Shown: positions 2,803 through 60,682 of the stretch, piece by piece
Position numbering within the stretch: the stretch's first letter is position 1
Layout: each line of letters begins with the position of its first letter
From: Octopus bimaculoides
Lineage: Eukaryota
Direction: 5' to 3'
Assembly: GCF_001194135.2 (NCBI RefSeq)
Contig: NC_069007.1
Coordinates: forward strand, 10,867,989 to 10,931,988
DNA: 64,000 nt
Position numbers and translations under genes: made by a program
Notes under the pieces: generated by a model
The model's database searches: none
What the model was told of the DNA's origin: nothing
What the model saw: only the letters and a program-made list of their open reading frames with translations

Positions 2803-3553
2803 GAGTGTGGCACTTCTTCACACAGCCGTATGAATGAAAACAGCCATGTGAAGAAGTCCTGCACTATAACAGTGTAGGGAACCTGTGGAAGAGGTAGAGC
2901 CAGGAAGACATGGGATGAAATAGTGAAGCATGTATCTTTGAATGTTGAGCTTCATGGAAGCAATGCCAAGTGAACAAGACCTTTGGCAATACACTGAGCT
3001 TGAGAAGACCCGTCAAGCTAAGTGAGATCATAGTCATGGCTGGTGTCACATAACTGGCATGTAAAAAGCACCCTTCAAACATTGGGCAATATGTTGTACT
3101 TGAGACGACCTGTCAAGCCAAGTGAAATTGGAGTCATGGCCGATATCAGTGCCATCTGACTGGCACCCATGCTGGTAGCATGTAAAAAAGCAGCATTTGA
3201 GCACTGGGCCTCATGGAGGCAGTGACAGGAGACTAAGACCTTTGGCAATATACTGTGCTTGTGTAGACCTGTCAAGCCAAGTGAGAGTGTAGTCGCGGCC
3301 GATGCCGGTGTCAGATCAATGGCGCCTGTGCCATTGATCTGACAATGCACCCATTGTCCAATGCACCAATGCACAAATCATAAAAAGCACCCACCACACT
3401 TTTGGTGTGGTTGGCATTAGGAAGGGCTTCCAGTTGTAGAAACCTTGTCAGATCAGATTGGAACCTGGTGCAGCTCCCTGACTTATCAGTTCTCGGTCAA
3501 ACCATCCAACCCATGGCAGCATGGAAAACAGACGTTAAATGATGATGATGATG
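2803..3553 (+). mobile_element. 5'-truncated RTE LINE 3' end (RT C-terminus, 3' UTR, (GAT)n tail)
   Basis: RMNENSHVKKSCTITV*GTCGRGRARKTWDEIVK, then the ggaagggc.tccag.tgtagaaac 3' UTR motif and an acgttaaat(gat)n tail. Confidence 0.9.
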
Positions 3554-18349: not shown

Positions 18350-18421
18350 GGCCAGCCATGAGACTCGAACTCACATCCCTGTGATTACACATCAAGTGCC
18401 TTACCATTAAGCTAAACTGCC
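18350..18421 (-). pseudogene. tRNA-Thr(TGT)-like pseudogene or solitary SINE head
   Basis: GGCAGTTTAGCTTAATGGTAAGGCACTTGATGTGTAATCACAGGGATGTGAGTTCGAGTCTCATGGCTGGCC has A and B boxes, T stem GTGAG/CTCAT, a mostly paired acceptor stem and a T5 run about 10 nt downstream. G at position 33 and a weak anticodon stem argue against a functional tRNA. Confidence 0.6.
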
Positions 18422-47284: not shown

Positions 47285-47319
47285 CATCTATATATGTGCC
47301 CTGAGAGAAAAGTTGGATT

Positions 47320-47760
47320 TAAGAAGCATCAGATGTGATGTGCAAGAGAGATGACTGTGCTGGTACGGTCATGTGTTGTGAATGAATGAGGACAGCTGTG
47401 TGAAAAAGTGTCACACCCTAGCAGTTGAGGGAACCTGTGGAAGAGGTAGACCCAGGATGACCTGGGATGAGGTGGTGAAGCACGACCTTCGAACATTGGG
47501 CCTTACCAAGACAATGACGGGTGACTGGGACCTTTGGAGATATGCTGTGCTTGAGAAGACCCAACAAGCCAAGTGAGACCATAGATCATGGCCTATGCAA
47601 GTGGGTGTAACCAGCCCATTTATGAATACCCCTCATTCATTGGACAAGAAACCATGCTTGTGAAGACATTGAGGCAAGTGAAATCAAAATCAAAATTGCT
47701 GACGTGGCCGATGAGAGTACCACCTGATTGGCACTCATACCAGTGGAACATTAAAAGCAC
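47320..47760 (+). mobile_element. RTE RT C-terminus and 3' UTR
   Basis: ORF 47382-47576 MNEDSCVKKCHTLAVEGTCGRGRPRMTWDEVVKHDLRTLGL. Confidence 0.9.
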
Positions 47761-47762
47761 AT

Positions 47763-47832
47763 CTGTTCGACAAATGGGAACATGAAACTCTGAGTAACAG
47801 TTTTTGTGATATTTTTGCTGCTTTTTAATAAA

Positions 47833-47835
<3 letters not shown>
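47763..47835 (+). ncRNA. Decayed copy of the 59-60 kb type I hammerhead element
   Basis: CTGT-TCGACAA-ATG GGAA CAT-GAAA-CTC T GAG-TA-ACAG, followed by the same 3' arm tttttgtgatatttttgctgctttttaataaagtat. Confidence 0.65.
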
Positions 47836-47867
<32 letters not shown>

Positions 47868-47869
47868 CA

Positions 47870-48220
47870 GGAACAGGGTTGGCTGTGTGGTAAGAAGCTT
47901 GCTTCTCAACCACATGGCTCAGTCCCATTATATGGCACCTTGGGCAAGTGTCTTTTACTATAACCTCAAGATGACCAAAGCCTTGTGAGTGGATTTGGTA
48001 GAAGGAAACTGAAAAAAGCCCATCATATGTGTGTGTGTGTGTGTGTTTGTCCCCCATCACTGCTTGACAACTGGTGTTGGTATGTTTATGTCCCTGTAAC
48101 TCAGTGAGACTGAAAAAGAAACATGAACTTGGGTCAATTCATTTGACTAAAATTCTTCTAGGTGGTGCCCCAGCATGGCCACAGCCTAATGTCTGAAACA
48201 AATAAAAGATAAAAGACATA
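47870..48220 (+). mobile_element. SINE family A
   Basis: Head, internal (TG)n and tail as in other copies. Confidence 0.85.
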
Positions 48221-48865
48221 TGTAAATTTGTTTAGAATTTAGTTAGAAATATGAAGTCTTAGTCTTTTACTGAATGCTCAATGCTAACAACATTGCAAGT
48301 GACAGCCTAAAATTCTTAAAAAAAAAAAAGAATGGTTAGCAAAAATTTCTTATAAATTATTTCACACAAATGGTCGCTGTAAATAATATTACATAACTCA
48401 AGAACCAGAATTAAGTCTCGATATTCAATTCTGAAAAAGACTTTCGGCTGCTCAATAGTTCTGTCACGCTTTATAAATAAGAATTTATTTTAGAAACATT
48501 TTCGTTGTTTTAAGGTTACTTCGAACAACCAAATATTTTAAATTGCTAATTATCCAAGAAATATGACAATCAAATCACCATAATACAAAGTTTTTATTCT
48601 AAAATAAATCATGAAAGGAGTAAATATTGAAGATTACAGGAAAATGGACGAGATGAGTTGTCTGGTTGTGTTGCTGCTTTTCATGGAGTTCTGAACAACA
48701 GAGGAATTTAACACTACCACCACCACCACTTCCCCTTATCATACTAAGAGTCTCTTTGCGTGTGCATGTCTATGATGCGTGTGAGCGTGTGTGGGGATGC
48801 TTCATTTTTTATTTTGGCATCTTTGTGTTCAGTCAAAGGAATAGTCAATACTGATAAAGCATGAG

Positions 48866-50022: not shown

Positions 50023-50580
50023 CGAGGGTGAGTTAAAAAGTAATGCCATTTTGTTTAGGACAGGTATAATTACCAACACAGGAACATGTATCATACATCA
50101 AAATGAAGCTAGTCCTCTGTGGATCACATCCCTACTTCTCAACATAGTCACCGTTTCTCTCAATAGCGATGTTCCACCTTCAAATGAGAGTATGTATCCC
50201 TGCCCCATAAAATTCTGTTGACTGTTCTTTGAGTCACTTTTTCACTACAGTTTTCACTTCCTCATCACTGGGATAATGTTTGCCTCTCAAACCCTCTTTT
50301 ATGGGGTCGAAGATATGATTGTCTGAAGGCACTGAATCTGGTGAGTGCAGGTACTGACCCTGTCAGTCTTACATTCATTAGTCAGCTTTCCCGGTACCCA
50401 ACAGGCACACACCTTTGAAAAGCCAAGTGATTTGACAATGTTGTAAGTACTTCCATGGCTCACTTCATGGTTTTTTGCCAACTCATCAAGAGTTACGTGC
50501 TTGTCTTCTCTGATCAGAGCATCTGCTTTTGCTTTATTGGCAGGATTCACAGAACCAACAAAGAGTAAAAATGTCCTGGA
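50023..50580 (-). mobile_element. Internally deleted mariner
   Basis: TA|CGAGGGTGAGTTAAAAAGTAATG TIR. Minus strand DALIREDKHVTLDELAK...LGFSKVCACWVPGKLT is joined to the C-terminal LRGKHYPSDEEVKTVV...RWNIAIERNGDYVEK*. Confidence 0.85.
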
Positions 50581-51269
50581 CTTCTGCTTTGCAAATAATG
50601 TGGTCTTCGTCCATAATGTTAAGGTGACACTGACAATTCTCTCGTACCATAACTTAATAGAGCTAACAATGTATGGTCTGCAGAATACTGCAGACATGTA
50701 GGCTACTAGGAGCCTGCAACTCCTCTCCAGCCTGAACTCTCATAAACCTGATTAGAAAGGTATTGAGAAAGAGGCCATGGAACAAAACTGGTCTACCAGT
50801 CTGACAGAATGTATCTCAGACAACAGAATTTGTCCTTCCTTTTAAAAGAGAGTAGGTGTGATTTGATGGAGATCTGGCTGCTATTTTACCTGTTGTTTTT
50901 GTCAGTGTTGTTTAGTCCCAAGATTGGTTCTGATTTAGCAGACATGATCAACCAAAGAAGCAGTGGGTGAATAGAAATGGTGCACTGCACACTTGTCTAT
51001 AAGTGTTCAGTACATGTTTGATTGTGAGGTGACAGTCAATACTGATTGGTCAATTAATTAGCAGTTGAGGTTCCTACCGTCAGCAGATGTACTTTATCGA
51101 CCCTTGGTGATTATTTGTAGGTCTGTAGCTTTTGTTGGAAAAATTAAACTTTGCTTTTACTTCATCCATCTCAGGGTAAAAAGAATAACAAAGAGAACAG
51201 TAGGAAAAGAAAGTCTTCTTTATGGTTGGCTCTTCAGGAAAATTGTTTTATACTGTTTATGGAAATAGC

Positions 51270-57464: not shown

Positions 57465-57528
57465 GACAGGTATCCAGTACTGATGAAGGGAGATACCCTG
57501 AAACCAGACTGGTATATTGGGTCTTGTC
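57465..57528 (+). ncRNA. Canonical-core type I hammerhead ribozyme
   Basis: Stem I GACAGG(T)ATCCAGTA / TATTGGGTCTTGTC; CTGATGA (57480-86); stem II AGGG-AGATA-CCCT; GAAA; stem III CCAG-A-CTGG; GUA triplet with predicted cleavage after 57514. Confidence 0.85.
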
Positions 57529-57829: not shown

Positions 57830-58873
57830 TTGCGCTTTTGAAGAATGCAGTTCGATTTTAACAGTTATTTTCTCAAATCTATAATAAAAGTGACAAAGGA
57901 GCATATTCGGCATATTTTGCTTTATGAGTTCAATAAAGGCAACAACACAACAGAAAGTATGAAGAATATTAATGTAGTATATGGAGATCGGACAATACAC
58001 ATAAGCCAGTATCAACAGTGGTTCCAGAAATTCTGAGATGGAAACTACAGCCTAGAAGGTGAGCCTCATCATCGACACCTGTGTGTCATTGGAAAAGTCA
58101 GCAAATTGGGTCAATGGGTTCCTCACAAACTTTCCGAGTCTAATCACATGCAGGGAGTGAATGTGTGCTCTTCTTTGCTGTCATGTCACATGAATGGACC
58201 ATTTTTGGACTGAATAGTGACTGATGAAGAGAAATGGGTTCTCTATAAAAATGTCAAGCACTGAAGACAGTGGGTAGGGAAAGGAGAAACACTGGCACCC
58301 CAGGCTAAAGAAGGTCAGCACCCATGTAGGGTGTTGTTATCTGTTTGGTGGGATATGAAAGGTTTCGTCCACTTTGAACTTTTTAACCTAAACCAAATGA
58401 TAACAAAGAAGATCTACTGGGAGCAGCTTGATTGGCTTAAGTAAGAGCTAGAAGAAAAATGATCATCTTTGGTTTCAAGATGAAAGGTGTTCTTCCATCA
58501 GGATAATGCTCGGCCATATACAGCAAGGATAACATTCCAAAGGCTGGAGTAGTTTGGATGGGAAACAATGCCTCTCCTACCATATTCACCAGACATTGCC
58601 CCATCTGATTATCATTTACTCCACAGTCTTCAAAATCATTTGGACAGAAAAAATATGAATTCTGTAGATGCGATGAGAAAAGTAGCGGAGGAGTATTTTT
58701 CATCACAGGCAAGTGTGTTTCGGAAGAGGAGCCTTGCAAGTTTACCAGATAGATGGAAGAGCATTGTAGAAAATGAAGGAGAGTATATTTTAGATTAAAA
58801 AGAACTTTGTTTATCTGAATTTTGGAAAATAATAGAAGTATAAAAATACTGCATTATTTATGGGATGACCAAA
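57830..58873 (+). mobile_element. Near-complete decayed mariner (DD34D)
   Basis: HIRHILLYEFNKG...WVPHKL...IVTDEEKW...VWWD...HQDNARP...YSPDIAPSDYHL with 34-residue spacing; right TIR gcattatttatgggatgaccaaa|TA. Confidence 0.93.
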
Positions 58874-59175: not shown

Positions 59176-59420
59176 ATTCAACAGAAGTGATATATTGGAG
59201 ATAGATAGGTAGATACATACATACAGAGAGAGAGAGAGAAACATATACAAGTACACAAACTGCATTACAAGCCACAATCTATAGAATTCTTCAAAACATT
59301 ATGTAAGTATAAACACACATAAAAGCAAAAAAANNNNNNNNNNNNNNNNNNNNNNNNNNNNNNNNNNNNNNNNNNNNNNNNNNNNNNNNNNNNNNNNNNN
59401 NNNNNNNNNNNNNNNTATAT

Positions 59421-59540
59421 ATATGCTTTATCAATAAAGCTGCAAAGATACCACAAAAAAAAACTGTCCGAAGAACAGGAACATGAAACTCTGAGTAACA
59501 GTTTTTGTGATGTCTTTGCAGCTTTATTCATAAAGTATAT
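59421..59540 (+). ncRNA. Type I hammerhead at the tip of a hairpin of about 45 bp (copy 1)
   Basis: AAAACTGT-CCGAAGA-ACA GGAA CAT-GAAA-CTC T GAG-TA|ACAGTTTT. Arms 59421-59467 and 59498-59540 are complementary. Stem II shows CpG decay. Confidence 0.75.
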
Positions 59541-60050
59541 TACTCTACCTCTGGTATTTGAGCACTATTTTCTCAATCTTGTTTCACATTTACGTGCTTA
59601 CTCTGGTATATTAGGCTTTCACTTCATACACACCACCTCAATTTGATCTGTTCTCAGTCGAAAGACACCTGTTGTTATATTGTTGTTGTTTGTATTTGTA
59701 ATTGTGTACCATGTTCACCATTTTTTGTCTTTGTTGCCATACACATTTGCTAGATTTCTTACAAAAAATCTAATGCTCTTAGCTTACGTTTTGGGGGCAA
59801 CCAGATTGAACTGTCTCAAGTGTAACTGTCTGAAACAGTAAGGACATCTGGTAACTTGACTGAAGAAAGAAGGCCATGAATGACCCGTCCTTTTTTTTTC
59901 ACTGTCCTTCTCATTGTTGTTTCTTCTGTCTGCCTTTGTATCGTCTGTCTATCTGAATGTTTTATTGTCCTCTATTGTATAAGCACATAAATGTGGAACA
60001 AGGTGGCAAAAAATAGTACTCAAATACCAGAGGTAGAGTAATATGCTTTA
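59531..60050. repeat. Inverted repeats of about 70 bp enclosing a unique spacer of about 380 bp
   Basis: 59531-59600 taaagtatattactctacctctggtatttgagcactattt...cacatttacgtgctta versus the reverse complement of 59980-60050. Confidence 0.85.
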
Positions 60051-60055
60051 TTAAA

Positions 60056-60130
60056 CAAAACTATCCGACGAACGGGAACGTGAAACTCCGAGTAACAGTT
60101 TTTGTGTTATTTTTGTTGCTTTTTAATAAA

Positions 60131-60135
<5 letters not shown>
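60056..60135 (+). ncRNA. Type I hammerhead (copy 2, intact stem II)
   Basis: CAAAACTAT-CCGACGA-ACG GGAA CGT-GAAA-CTC C GAG-TA|ACAGTTTT; predicted cleavage after 60094. Confidence 0.8.
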
Positions 60136-60177
<42 letters not shown>

Positions 60178-60199
60178 TGTTAAAGAGGACAACAAATAT

Positions 60200-60682
60200 T
60201 AAGGCAAATCTAACATCTCAAGTCATATACATCATTACTATTGGAAAAAATTTTAAGTCTTACAGCTGTTTCTGGGATATCCCAGAGTATGGGATATTCT
60301 GTCATCAGAGAAAAATTAACCATCGTAGAACTGATAGCTGCAACTACAAATGTGGGACAGACTGCCCGCTGCAAGTCCAATGCAGAAGATTCAACATCGT
60401 ATACTAATGCACCATTCACAACATAGTAAACAATTCCTATAGCTACTACATTGGATCTACTAAAAATTTTAAACAAAGATATCATACACATTTAAGCACA
60501 TTTAAATATAAAGAGAATAGCAATTCCACATAAAGAGAATAACAATTCCAGCCACGTACACCATCTAATTAATAGAAAAATACAATATAGAATTTCCTGG
60601 GCTATAATAGACCTGGGTATCCTGTATCAGGGCCAACACTCCATTTGTGGACTCTGCTTAAAAGAAGCCCTCAAAATTTGTG
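60200..60682 (+). mobile_element. Penelope-like GIY-YIG endonuclease remnant
   Basis: CNYKCGTDCPLQVQCRRFNIVY*CTIHN...YYIGSTKNFKQRYHTHLSTF...ISWAII...CGLCLKEALKI. Confidence 0.85.

What the first reader, a model, noticed from the sequence alone, without database searches (positions are those of the whole stretch)
59421..60135. Retrozyme-like unit: two direct hammerheads release a 597-nt RNA whose ends form a long stem
Seen directly: type I HHR folds with GUA sites after 59497 and 60094; the monomer between them starts with ACAGTTTT...TAAAGTATAT plus a 70-nt arm and ends with the complementary arm, ATATGCTTTA...AAAACTAT and the HHR core. If ligated, it is a circle with the ribozyme at the tip of a helix of roughly 90 bp. 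A PLE GIY-YIG remnant starts about 70 bp downstream. Established: PLE terminal repeats carry type I HHRs, and tandem type I HHR repeats (retrozymes) yield small circular RNAs in several animals. The 1-nt-loop CUC-N-GAG stem III suits a double-hammerhead fold between the two copies. Inference: a non-autonomous, PLE-mobilised retrozyme family of octopus, which I do not know to be described.
Basis: partly seen in the sequence, partly recalled or inferred. Interest (0 to 1): 0.9.

Follow-up and report, generated by a model that had tools for sequence, protein, structure and literature searches.

The report
Decayed hammerhead retroelement in a TA-repeat
This is one old, mutated copy of a small non-coding jumping element carrying two hammerhead-ribozyme-like hairpins of the type used by Hydra-clade Penelope-like retrotransposons, an ordinary kind of element not yet reported from octopus in the papers searched.

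Summary
The anatomy is real. Two direct copies of a 30-nt hammerhead-like tip lie 597 nt apart, each inside a long hairpin. The RNA between the predicted cut sites closes with a ~100-nt-arm helix. The whole 716-bp block sits between TA repeats.

The ribozyme call needs qualifying. All three copies in the window read CCGANGA or UCGACAA, with C rather than the conserved U at core position 4. Copy A has a broken helix II and copy B a stem I mismatch.

Helix III (A-CUC-N-GAG-U, one central base) and the layout "hammerhead, short tail, (TA)n" match what I found in Hydra-clade Penelope-like elements (PLEs) fetched from other organisms. One of those contigs carries a 279-bp tandem retrozyme-like array. 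The downstream GIY-YIG remnant belongs to that clade (CxCX5C linker, no CCHH).

Best reading: a decayed, non-coding, PLE-mobilised retrozyme-like insertion of 1.2 units.

Not shown: that the 597-nt unit recurs as a family, that it cleaves, or that it circularises. The central 379 nt is no more structured than shuffled sequence, so a 0.5-kb inverted-repeat element inserted between two 120-bp hammerhead hairpins remains a live rival.

Verdict: new member of a known kind, modest interest.

The parts
59416..59420 (.). Visible end of a TA repeat on the left flank. It follows the assembly gap 59334-59415.
   Evidence: The bases read TATAT where the internal b'/a junction reads GAGTA, so this is flank rather than another unit.
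59421..59467 (+). Arm a of hairpin A, the 5' strand of an extended stem I. It ends in AAAACTGT.
   Evidence: I2: 39 nt, 90% complementary to 59502-59540.
59468..59497 (+). Hammerhead-like tip, copy A: CCGAAGA-ACA/GGAA/CAU-GAAA-CUC-U-GAG-UA. The predicted cut is after 59497. Helix II is broken.
59498..59540 (+). Arm a', the 3' strand of stem I. It carries AATAAA-like ATAAAG and ends in TATAT. The same segment forms the 42-nt tail at the right end.
59541..59600 (+). Arm b, which is contiguous with a' and complementary to b'.
   Evidence: I1, I3.
59601..59979 (+). Central non-coding body c. It has no excess RNA structure and no protein or DNA relatives were found.
   Evidence: z = -0.14; six-frame query, no hit; no other copy in the window.
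59980..60040 (+). Arm b', the reverse complement of b.
60041..60064 (+). Arm a of hairpin B. It is about 18-22 nt shorter than in copy A and ends in AAAACTAT.
60065..60094 (+). Hammerhead-like tip, copy B: CCGACGA-ACG/GGAA/CGU-GAAA-CUC-C-GAG-UA. The predicted cut is after 60094.
   Evidence: (passes the relaxed descriptor; 0 hits in 200 shuffles).
60095..60136 (+). Arm a' of hairpin B. This is the 42-nt tail between the last hammerhead site and the TA repeat.
   Evidence: The same tail precedes (TA)n at 47797-47842.
60132..60173 (.). (TA)21 microsatellite on the right flank. TA repeats are the preferred PLE target.
   Evidence: Craig 2021 (PMC8557442).
60261..60678 (+). 5'-truncated, frame-shifted endonuclease remnant of a Hydra-clade PLE: decayed CxCX5C linker, GIY-YIG, C-terminal CxxC. 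It is probably a separate insertion into the same TA repeat.
   Evidence: (74% nt identity to L005).
47763..47863 (+). Third copy, at an independent site: CTGT + tip (UCGACAA-AUG/GGAA/CAU-GAAA-CUC-U-GAG-UA) + a' + (TA)15. It is joined at its 5' side to a LINE 3'-UTR fragment.

Best explanation
The block 59421-60136 is one old retro-insertion, 1.2 units long, of a short non-coding element. Its ends are a hammerhead-bearing hairpin of the kind found at the 3' end and pseudo-LTR of Hydra-clade Penelope-like elements (PLEs).

Inferred mechanism:
1. A master copy is transcribed as a more-than-unit RNA.
2. The two hammerheads pair through their palindromic helix III as a double hammerhead and may cut after GUA. 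This releases a 597-nt RNA whose ends are held together by the a'b/b'a helix and could be ligated.
3. A Hydra-clade PLE reverse transcriptase/endonuclease supplied in trans nicks a (TA)n tract.
4. It starts reverse transcription internally, at the UAUAU stretch 42 nt downstream of the hammerhead site, on uncut or circular RNA.
5. It runs on for more than one unit, which gives 'hairpin, body, hairpin' bounded by TA repeats.

This particular copy is dead: about 15% divergence between its two repeats, CpG decay, and a damaged helix in each hammerhead.

Shown: the anatomy, the non-random hammerhead likeness, the TA-repeat flanks, the Hydra-clade neighbour, and the same end layout in real Hydra-clade PLEs.

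Inferred: trans-mobilisation, cleavage, circularisation, and that 597 nt is the family unit.
For: 1. Anatomy and statistics.

2. The element ends 42 nt past the hammerhead site at (TA)n at two independent loci, 60136 and 47842. It starts at TA-rich microhomology.

3. Fetched Hydra-clade PLE loci show the same build.
- L008 has RVT_1-matching ORFs followed by the endonuclease ORF. After the stop comes CUGAAGA...GAAA-CAG-G-CUG-UA, a 30-nt tail and (TA)5.
- L009 has (TA)n, then 3.2 units of a 279-bp repeat with hammerheads GAAA-CAC-C-GUG-UC, ending 14 nt past the last site at (TA)n. A second hammerhead follows with a 16-nt tail, (TA)n and a 5'-truncated endonuclease, the same neighbour order as in the window.
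- L007 and L010 have GAAA-CAG-A-CUG-UC and GAAA-CGC-G-GCG-UA.

4. The endonuclease remnant has 1285 relatives at E<=1e-3. Long ones carry RT motifs N-terminal to a CxCX5C + GIY-YIG domain without CCHH. That matches the published Hydra-clade definition, which also states canonical hammerheads and near-universal (TA)n insertion.

5. A PLE RT initiates internally, downstream of the hammerhead, on AT-rich targets, and does not need cleavage in vitro (PMC11167929). This explains the tail.

6. The ancestral stem carried a shared G.U pair (ATATGC against GTATAT) in copies A and B. That fits a + strand RNA helix rather than an exact DNA palindrome.

7. No ORF above 74 aa and no protein relatives; G+C is 36%.
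Against: - Core position 4 is C in all three copies, and 10.1-11.1 is A-U. Every other hammerhead of this build that I saw has U4. U4C considerably lowers activity in vitro (PMC3088659).
- The hammerhead fold of the restored tip (-13.2 kcal/mol) is not the minimum-energy fold (-16.0). An alternative CCG/CGG pairing competes with it.
- The central 379 nt is unstructured (z = -0.14). [quoted passage not shown]
- Only one full unit was seen. The spacer does not recur in the window or in 20 kb of Octopus vulgaris.
- Stem mismatches are A.C as often as G.U, so there is no sign of selection on this copy.
Confidence: 0.58

Rival explanations
1. Nested insertions. The true hammerhead unit is only the ~120-bp hairpin (a-tip-a'), present as two adjacent units or as two solo 5'-truncated PLE ends in a TA repeat. 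An unrelated ~0.5-kb element with ~73-bp terminal inverted repeats (CTCTACCTCTGG...CCAGAGGTAGAG), MITE- or foldback-like with a TA target, landed in the TA-rich junction between them. Because a' and a are complementary, any palindromic insert there creates the long 'monomer stem' automatically.
For: - The junctions read TA|CTCTACC...GGTAGAG|TA, which is compatible with a TA duplication.
- The body is long inverted repeats around a centre with no excess structure (z = -0.14), the usual anatomy of a DNA inverted-repeat element.
- Both hairpins begin at the same base (ATATGC) and end at the same base, as discrete modules would.
- TA repeats collect multiple insertions, as seen in L009.
Against: - No second copy of the putative inverted-repeat element exists in the window or the fetched octopus DNA.
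- The insertion would have to fall exactly at the unit junction.
- The divergence of the b/b' arms (12%) is about the same as that of the two hairpins (15%), as expected for a single event.
- The L009 array shows that 'n units plus one extra hammerhead', bounded by (TA)n, is a normal product of this system.
Confidence: 0.22
2. LINE-mobilised SINE-like element. The tip plus a' tail is the 3' recognition stem-loop of a LINE subfamily with a (TA)n tail. The 716-bp block would be a non-autonomous partner, and its hammerhead likeness incidental or vestigial.
For: - At 47302-47863 a LINE ORF2 C-terminus (80-81% aa identity to an Octopus vulgaris predicted protein) and part of its 3' UTR run directly into the same tip, a' and (TA)n.
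- The tail contains AATAAA and ends in a microsatellite, as many LINE/SINE ends do.
Against: - Three other copies of that LINE 3' region in the window (52814-52572 minus strand, 2830-3305, 44523-44432 minus strand) match only up to about 47600 and show no match to the tip or tail.
- Where the two longer copies were read through, they continue into a different 3' UTR (both), and copy 2830-3305 ends in ATG-type repeats.
- The unit without its tip has no similarity to the LINE 3' UTR beyond shuffled controls. Copy C therefore looks like a chimera or a truncated insertion.
- The hammerhead build and the (TA)n end are those of Hydra-clade PLEs.
Confidence: 0.07
3. One-off internally deleted PLE. 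This would be a single Hydra-clade PLE copy (pseudo-LTR, ORF, pseudo-LTR) that lost its ORF by deletion or rearrangement after insertion, not a propagating non-autonomous family.
For: - The terminal direct repeats with hammerheads look like pseudo-LTRs.
- Hydra-clade elements are short, under 3 kb.
- Only one full copy was seen.
Against: - The body shows no trace of RT or endonuclease coding sequence in any frame.
- The b/b' arms abut the hairpins symmetrically, which a random deletion would not produce.
Confidence: 0.1

Closest known systems
Non-LTR retrozymes of animals (Cervera & de la Pena 2020, PMC7229834; Li et al. 2026 preprint 10.64898/2026.07.22.740005)
   Same: - Direct repeats carry type I hammerhead motifs around non-coding, low-GC sequence (36% here).
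- The hammerhead sits at the tip of the helix that joins the monomer ends.
- A weak, palindromic helix III implies cleavage as a dimer.
- PLEs co-occur and are proposed as the mobilisers.
   Different: - The monomer is 597 nt, against the usual 170-400 nt.
- Only 1.2 units are present, not a multimer array.
- The centre has no excess structure.
- The core carries C4 and A10.1-U11.1.
- No expression or circular-RNA data exist for this locus.
Hydra-clade Penelope-like elements (Craig et al. 2021, PMC8557442) and their hammerhead-bearing pseudo-LTRs
   Same: - Insertion into (TA)n.
- A hammerhead close to the 3' end, followed by a short tail.
- Helix III built as A-NNN-N-N'N'N'-U in every example I fetched (L007, L008, L009, L010).
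- A Hydra-type endonuclease remnant (CxCX5C, no CCHH) lies next door.
   Different: - No RT or endonuclease ORF lies between the repeats.
- The hairpin's stem I extends to about 40 bp.
- Core position 4 is C, whereas the fetched PLE hammerheads all read CUGANGA.
279-bp tandem hammerhead array in ENA contig ERZ25766962:ctg13477 (locus L009 971-1875, unknown eukaryote)
   Same: - It is bounded on both sides by (TA)n.
- It starts a few bases before a hammerhead and ends 14 nt after one.
- Helix III is CAC-C-GUG with one central base.
- It lies directly upstream of another hammerhead-tail-(TA)n followed by a 5'-truncated Hydra-type endonuclease.
   Different: - It has 3.2 nearly identical units with a canonical CUGAUGA core and G10.1-C11.1.
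- Its monomer is half the size and structured throughout (z = -4.0).
- It looks young and probably active, whereas the window copy is decayed.
Natural U4C hammerhead variant of a viroid (cited in Perreault et al. 2011, PMC3088659)
   Same: C replaces the conserved U4 in an otherwise complete core.
   Different: The viroid variant is known to remain infectious despite poor cleavage in vitro. Nothing is known about the activity of the variant seen here.

Membership tests
Hammerhead ribozyme, type I | Conserved core C3 U4 G5 A6 N7 G8 A9 ... G12 A13 A14 A15.1 ... U16.1 H17 | tested here: not met
   11 of 12 specified positions are present in copies A and B. Position 4 is C in all three copies (CCGAAGA, CCGACGA, UCGACAA). 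Copy C also has U3/A8, a known co-varying pair.
Hammerhead ribozyme, type I | Three helices around the core, with stem I open and helices II and III closed | tested here: inconclusive
   The inferred ancestor has stem I of at least 8 bp, helix II ACG/CGU + GGAA, and helix III ACUC-N-GAGU. Copy A's helix II is broken and copy B's stem I has one mismatch. The hammerhead fold is 2.8 kcal/mol above the minimum-energy fold.
Hammerhead ribozyme, type I | Match to curated covariance models | tested here: not met
   No Rfam hammerhead hit at E<=10. The same models miss canonical-core hammerheads of this build in L007 and at 57472-57522, so this feature has little weight.
Hammerhead ribozyme, type I | Self-cleavage at the predicted site | not testable with these tools
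   Needs in vitro transcription, or RNA ends from RNA-seq.
Animal non-LTR retrozyme | Head-to-tail repeats each carrying a type I hammerhead (dimer to multimer) | tested here: met
   Two same-sense copies lie 597 nt apart, making 1.2 units. The left flank suggests no further units.
Animal non-LTR retrozyme | Non-coding, low-GC, highly self-paired monomer of a few hundred nt | tested here: inconclusive
   It is non-coding and 36% G+C. The terminal helix is strong (z = -7.75) but the central 379 nt is unstructured (z = -0.14). At 597 nt it is above the usual range.
Animal non-LTR retrozyme | A family of many dispersed or tandem copies in the genome | tested here: inconclusive
   The 64-kb window holds one full unit and one tail fragment. 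There is none in 20 kb of O. vulgaris. No octopus genome could be searched.
Animal non-LTR retrozyme | Expressed as linear and circular RNA of unit length | not testable with these tools
   No transcriptome access.
Hydra-clade PLE (the neighbouring remnant) | C-terminal GIY-YIG endonuclease with a CxCX5C linker, no CCHH, and CxxC near the conserved E | tested here: met
   The relatives show CNCx5C, VVYKA...YIG without internal Cys pairs, and C.LC..E. The long ones carry RT motifs upstream. In the window the linker is decayed to SCNYKCGTDC. A relative of the remnant (L005, 74% nt identity over 60314-60679) keeps SCNCRSGTDC.
Hydra-clade PLE-type 3' end (the unit itself) | A hammerhead near the 3' end, a short tail, and insertion into (TA)n | tested here: met
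   A 42-nt tail followed by (TA)n occurs at 60095-60173 and at 47797-47863. Tails are 30 nt in L008 and 14 and 16 nt in L009. Published.
Hydra-clade PLE-type 3' end (the unit itself) | Sequence homology of the tip and tail to an autonomous PLE of the same genome | not tested
   No octopus PLE with its 3' end could be retrieved. L005 stops at the ORF end, and L006 has only 119 nt of 3' flank, with no hammerhead noted on inspection.

The most novel reading that the evidence does not exclude
Octopods carry a lineage-specific retrozyme family whose hammerhead has a natural U4C core yet still cuts as a double hammerhead, possibly assisted by PLE protein. It would yield ~600-nt circular RNAs closed by a ~100-bp near-perfect duplex. 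Such a long double-stranded RNA would be an obvious substrate for the very active cephalopod ADAR editing system.
Probability: 0.1. Interest if true: 0.55.

Novelty: new member of a known kind. Interest (0 to 1): 0.3.

Why it matters
If the family is real, it extends PLE-associated retrozymes to cephalopods. It also links them specifically to the recently defined Hydra clade, through a recognisable signature: a 9-nt palindromic helix III, a short tail and a (TA)n target. That signature could be turned into a search descriptor, since Rfam models miss this build. The fixed C4 core is a natural test of whether hammerhead cleavage is needed for propagation at all, a question left open by the in vitro PLE work. 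As it stands, the locus is a single decayed copy and changes nothing fundamental.

Tried and rejected
1. Rfam at gathering and at E<=10 gave no ribozyme family. Calibration showed the models are blind to this helix III build.
2. An exact-pattern scan of JGI metagenome contigs and IMG/VR for GAAACTCNGAGTAACAGTTTT found only two chance hits in what look like bacterial coding sequences, and none in viral contigs.
3. A six-frame pseudo-protein of the whole unit against 5.8 billion proteins, meant to fish out other copies, gave nothing.
4. The word-indexed search with the GIY-YIG remnant gave nothing. The exhaustive HMMER search then worked.
5. A LINE handle gave 20 kb of O. vulgaris (L003) with no copy of the unit, though with one PLE-type hammerhead.
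6. Idea rejected: the left hairpin is the inverted 5'-truncated copy typical of PLE insertions. The tip is in the same sense in both hairpins.
7. Idea rejected: the unit derives from the LINE 3' UTR. Local alignment scores are no better than shuffles.
8. Compensatory changes in copy C (helix II C-G to U-A; U3/A8) were considered as evidence of selection. The helix II change was discounted, because three of the four possible CpG-decay outcomes keep helix II paired. U3/A8 is a single case.
9. The supplement of Craig 2021 with hammerhead sequences is not held.

Full report
**What is in the sequence**

The block 59421-60136 has the order a - H - a' - b - c - b' - a - H - a'.
- H is a 30-nt tip, at 59468-59497 and 60065-60094.
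- a and a' are complementary arms. In hairpin A they run 39 nt at 90% complementarity.
- b (59541-60600 is not meant; b is 59541-59600) and b' (59980-60040) are a second pair of complementary arms, directly contiguous with a' and a.
- c is a 379-nt centre.
- The two H + a' copies are 84-85% identical and start exactly 597 nt apart.
- The left flank, after the gap 59334-59415, reads TATAT. The right flank is (TA)21 at 60132-60173.

The RNA between the two predicted cut sites folds at -172.6 kcal/mol, against -126 +/- 6 for shuffles (z = -7.75). One long terminal helix is formed by a'b and b'a.

**Is the tip a hammerhead?**

Read as a type I hammerhead, copy B is:

AAAACUAU | CCGACGA | ACG-GGAA-CGU | GAAA | CUC-C-GAG | UA / ACAGUUUU

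Eleven of the twelve specified core positions are right. H17 is A and the site is GUA. There are four departures.
- Position 4 is C in all three copies in the window. The third copy is at 47767-47796.
- Pair 10.1-11.1 is A-U rather than G-C.
- Copy A's helix II is destroyed by two CpG-to-CpA changes.
- Copy B has an A.C mismatch in stem I.

The likeness is far beyond chance. A descriptor allowing one core mismatch finds copy B and one other site, and nothing in 200 dinucleotide shuffles. A strict CUGANGA descriptor finds three further motifs in the window against 0.02 expected.

Rfam reports no hammerhead even at E<=10. It also misses canonical-core hammerheads of the same build in a real PLE (L007) and at 57472-57522. 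That negative carries little weight.

Published work says U4C considerably lowers activity in vitro yet still permits viroid infectivity (PMC3088659).

The restored tip's hammerhead fold is 2.8 kcal/mol above its minimum-energy fold.

**What kind of hammerhead, and what kind of element**

The downstream remnant (60261-60678, + strand, with stops and one frameshift) gave only a sub-threshold Pfam GIY-YIG hit. The word-indexed search found nothing. An exhaustive HMMER search found 1285 relatives.

The longer relatives have reverse-transcriptase motifs (FD..FYPSI, YRDDG, FLDV) followed by a CxCX5C linker. Their GIY-YIG domain lacks the CCHH cysteines and ends in C.LC..E. That is the published definition of the Hydra clade of Penelope-like elements (PLEs). 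The same source says these elements carry canonical hammerheads, are under 3 kb, occur in molluscs among other phyla, and almost always insert into (TA)n (PMC8557442).

A Logan contig (L005) is 74% identical in DNA to 60314-60679 and keeps the linker intact.

I fetched DNA around several relatives.
- **L007.** At a tandem ORF-ORF junction the hammerhead is AGGGCAU-CUGAUGA-...-GAAA-CAG-A-CUG-UC/AUGCCUU.
- **L008.** The locus has RVT_1-matching ORFs followed by the endonuclease ORF. After the stop comes a hammerhead with GAAA-CAG-G-CUG-UA, then 30 nt, then (TA)5.
- **L010.** The hammerhead reads GAAA-CGC-G-GCG-UA.
- **L009.** A (TA)n tract is followed by 3.2 units of a 279-bp repeat, each with CUACA-CUGAUGA-GCUG..CAGC-GAAA-CAC-C-GUG-UC/UGUAG. 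The array ends 14 nt past the last site at (TA)n. Next come another hammerhead, a 16-nt tail, (TA)n, and a 5'-truncated Hydra-type endonuclease.

Three features of the finding therefore recur as a signature of this PLE clade and its non-coding satellites:
- helix III as A-NNN-N-N'N'N'-U with a single central base;
- a short tail between the hammerhead site and a TA repeat;
- a truncated endonuclease copy as the next insertion in the same TA tract.

The window's own canonical-core motifs at 57472-57522 and 31254-31201 (minus strand) have the same helix III build and A10.1-U11.1.

The tail is explained by published biochemistry. A PLE reverse transcriptase starts internally, downstream of the hammerhead, on AT-rich nicked DNA, and cleavage is not needed in vitro (PMC11167929).

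**The third copy**

At 47763-47863 the tip, a' and (TA)15 recur, fused on the 5' side to the end of a LINE ORF2 and part of its 3' UTR.
- Other copies of that LINE region match only up to about 47600. The two read through continue into a different 3' UTR; one (2830-3305) ends in ATG-type repeats.
- The unit has no similarity to the LINE UTR beyond shuffled controls.
- Its differences from copy B are mostly CpG transitions.

I read it as a 5'-truncated or template-switched copy at an independent site. It shows two things. The tail plus (TA)n is the true 3' end of the element. C4 is not private to one insertion.

**What remains open**

The unit is non-coding. The longest open stretch between stops is 74 codons, and a six-frame query found no relatives. 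G+C is 36%. Both fit retrozymes.

The centre c, however, has no more structure than shuffled sequence on either strand (z = -0.14 and -0.47). [quoted passage not shown]

The junctions TA|CTCTACC...GGTAGAG|TA would also fit a ~0.5-kb inverted-repeat DNA element with a TA duplication, inserted between two 120-bp hairpin units. Because a' and a are complementary, such an insert would create the 'monomer stem' automatically.

Three points argue against that rival.
- No other copy of b-c-b' was seen.
- The divergence of b/b' (12%) is close to that of the two hairpins (15%).
- L009 shows that 'n units plus one hammerhead', bounded by TA repeats, is the normal product of this system.

Mismatches in the long helix are A.C as often as G.U. 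That is expected for a dead copy decaying neutrally from a near-perfect stem. One G.U pair shared by copies A and B hints at an RNA-level helix rather than a DNA-level one.

**Comparison and novelty**

The element works like an animal non-LTR retrozyme, that is, a non-autonomous PLE derivative. Its end module is that of Hydra-clade PLEs.

It fails one defining hammerhead feature (U4), so I do not file it as a proven hammerhead. I also cannot show the family or circular-RNA features of retrozymes.

Searches of the paper library for retrozyme or hammerhead ribozyme together with octopus returned no paper whose listed title or abstract concerns an octopus retrozyme or hammerhead. One squid genome paper lists 235 Rfam hammerhead hits.

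The window is probably octopod: its LINE fragment is 81% identical in protein to an Octopus vulgaris prediction. This was not otherwise tested.

**Verdict**

A real but decayed member of a known kind of element, with a slightly unusual core and size. Interest is modest.

Noticed in passing
window 57472-57522 (+): Canonical-core type I hammerhead motif: AUCCAGUA-CUGAUGA-AGGG/AGAUA/CCCU-GAAA-CCAG-A-CUGG-UA/UAUUGGGU. It follows a (CA)n tract and lies ~350 bp upstream of a mariner-like remnant. It has the same palindromic helix III build as the finding. Descriptor hits are 3 observed against 0.02 expected. Rfam misses it.
   Followed up: partly
window 31254-31201 (-) and 11649-11594 (-): Two more CUGAAGA-core hammerhead-like motifs. 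The first has a 10-bp helix II and helix III CUA-U-UAG. The second is weaker. They are probably solo PLE ends.
   Followed up: no
window 47302-47766 (+); also 52814-52572 (-), 2830-3305 (+), 44523-44432 (-): 3' fragments of one LINE family (ORF2 C-terminus ...WYGHV.RM.EDSCVKKC...GRGRPR.TW). Their 3' UTR contains tandem copies of a module derived from the ORF's own last ~100 nt. The best protein match is an Octopus vulgaris hypothetical protein.
   Followed up: partly
window 47750-47770 (+): Junction between the LINE 3' UTR and the hammerhead tail. It falls in a ~29-nt stretch resembling both partners, which suggests template switching at microhomology or a chimeric retrocopy.
   Followed up: partly
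window 47866-48230 (+): A SINE-like repeat (GGTTGGCTGTGTGGTAAGAAGCTTGCTTC...), by eye tRNA-derived, lies directly after the (TA)n of copy C.
   Followed up: no
window 18350-18421 (-): The only Rfam gathering-level hit in the window is a tRNA at 29.9 bits against a cut-off of 29. It may be a tRNA gene, a pseudogene or a SINE head.
   Followed up: no
window 50299-50697 (-) and 57850-58300 (+): Mariner-type transposase remnants, with the helix-turn-helix region readable in translation.
   Followed up: no
L009 971-1875 (ENA ERZ25766962:ctg13477, unknown eukaryote): A young, nearly identical 3.2-unit tandem array of a 279-bp hammerhead repeat, bounded by (TA)n. It lies next to a second hammerhead-tail-(TA)n and a truncated Hydra-type PLE endonuclease. 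It is a clean example of a retrozyme tied to the Hydra clade.
   Followed up: partly
L006 68-2488 (Logan SRR11869389): An apparently intact 806-aa Hydra-clade PLE ORF (RT + CxCX5C + GIY-YIG), from a run whose accession is adjacent to that of the run which yielded the contig 74% identical to the window's endonuclease remnant. It might represent an active PLE in a related organism.
   Followed up: partly
window, whole: About 11% of the window is assembly gaps, most of them abutting TA, CA or GA microsatellites (seen in the ORF listing and in the regions read). Repeat-array lengths here are therefore unreliable.
   Followed up: no
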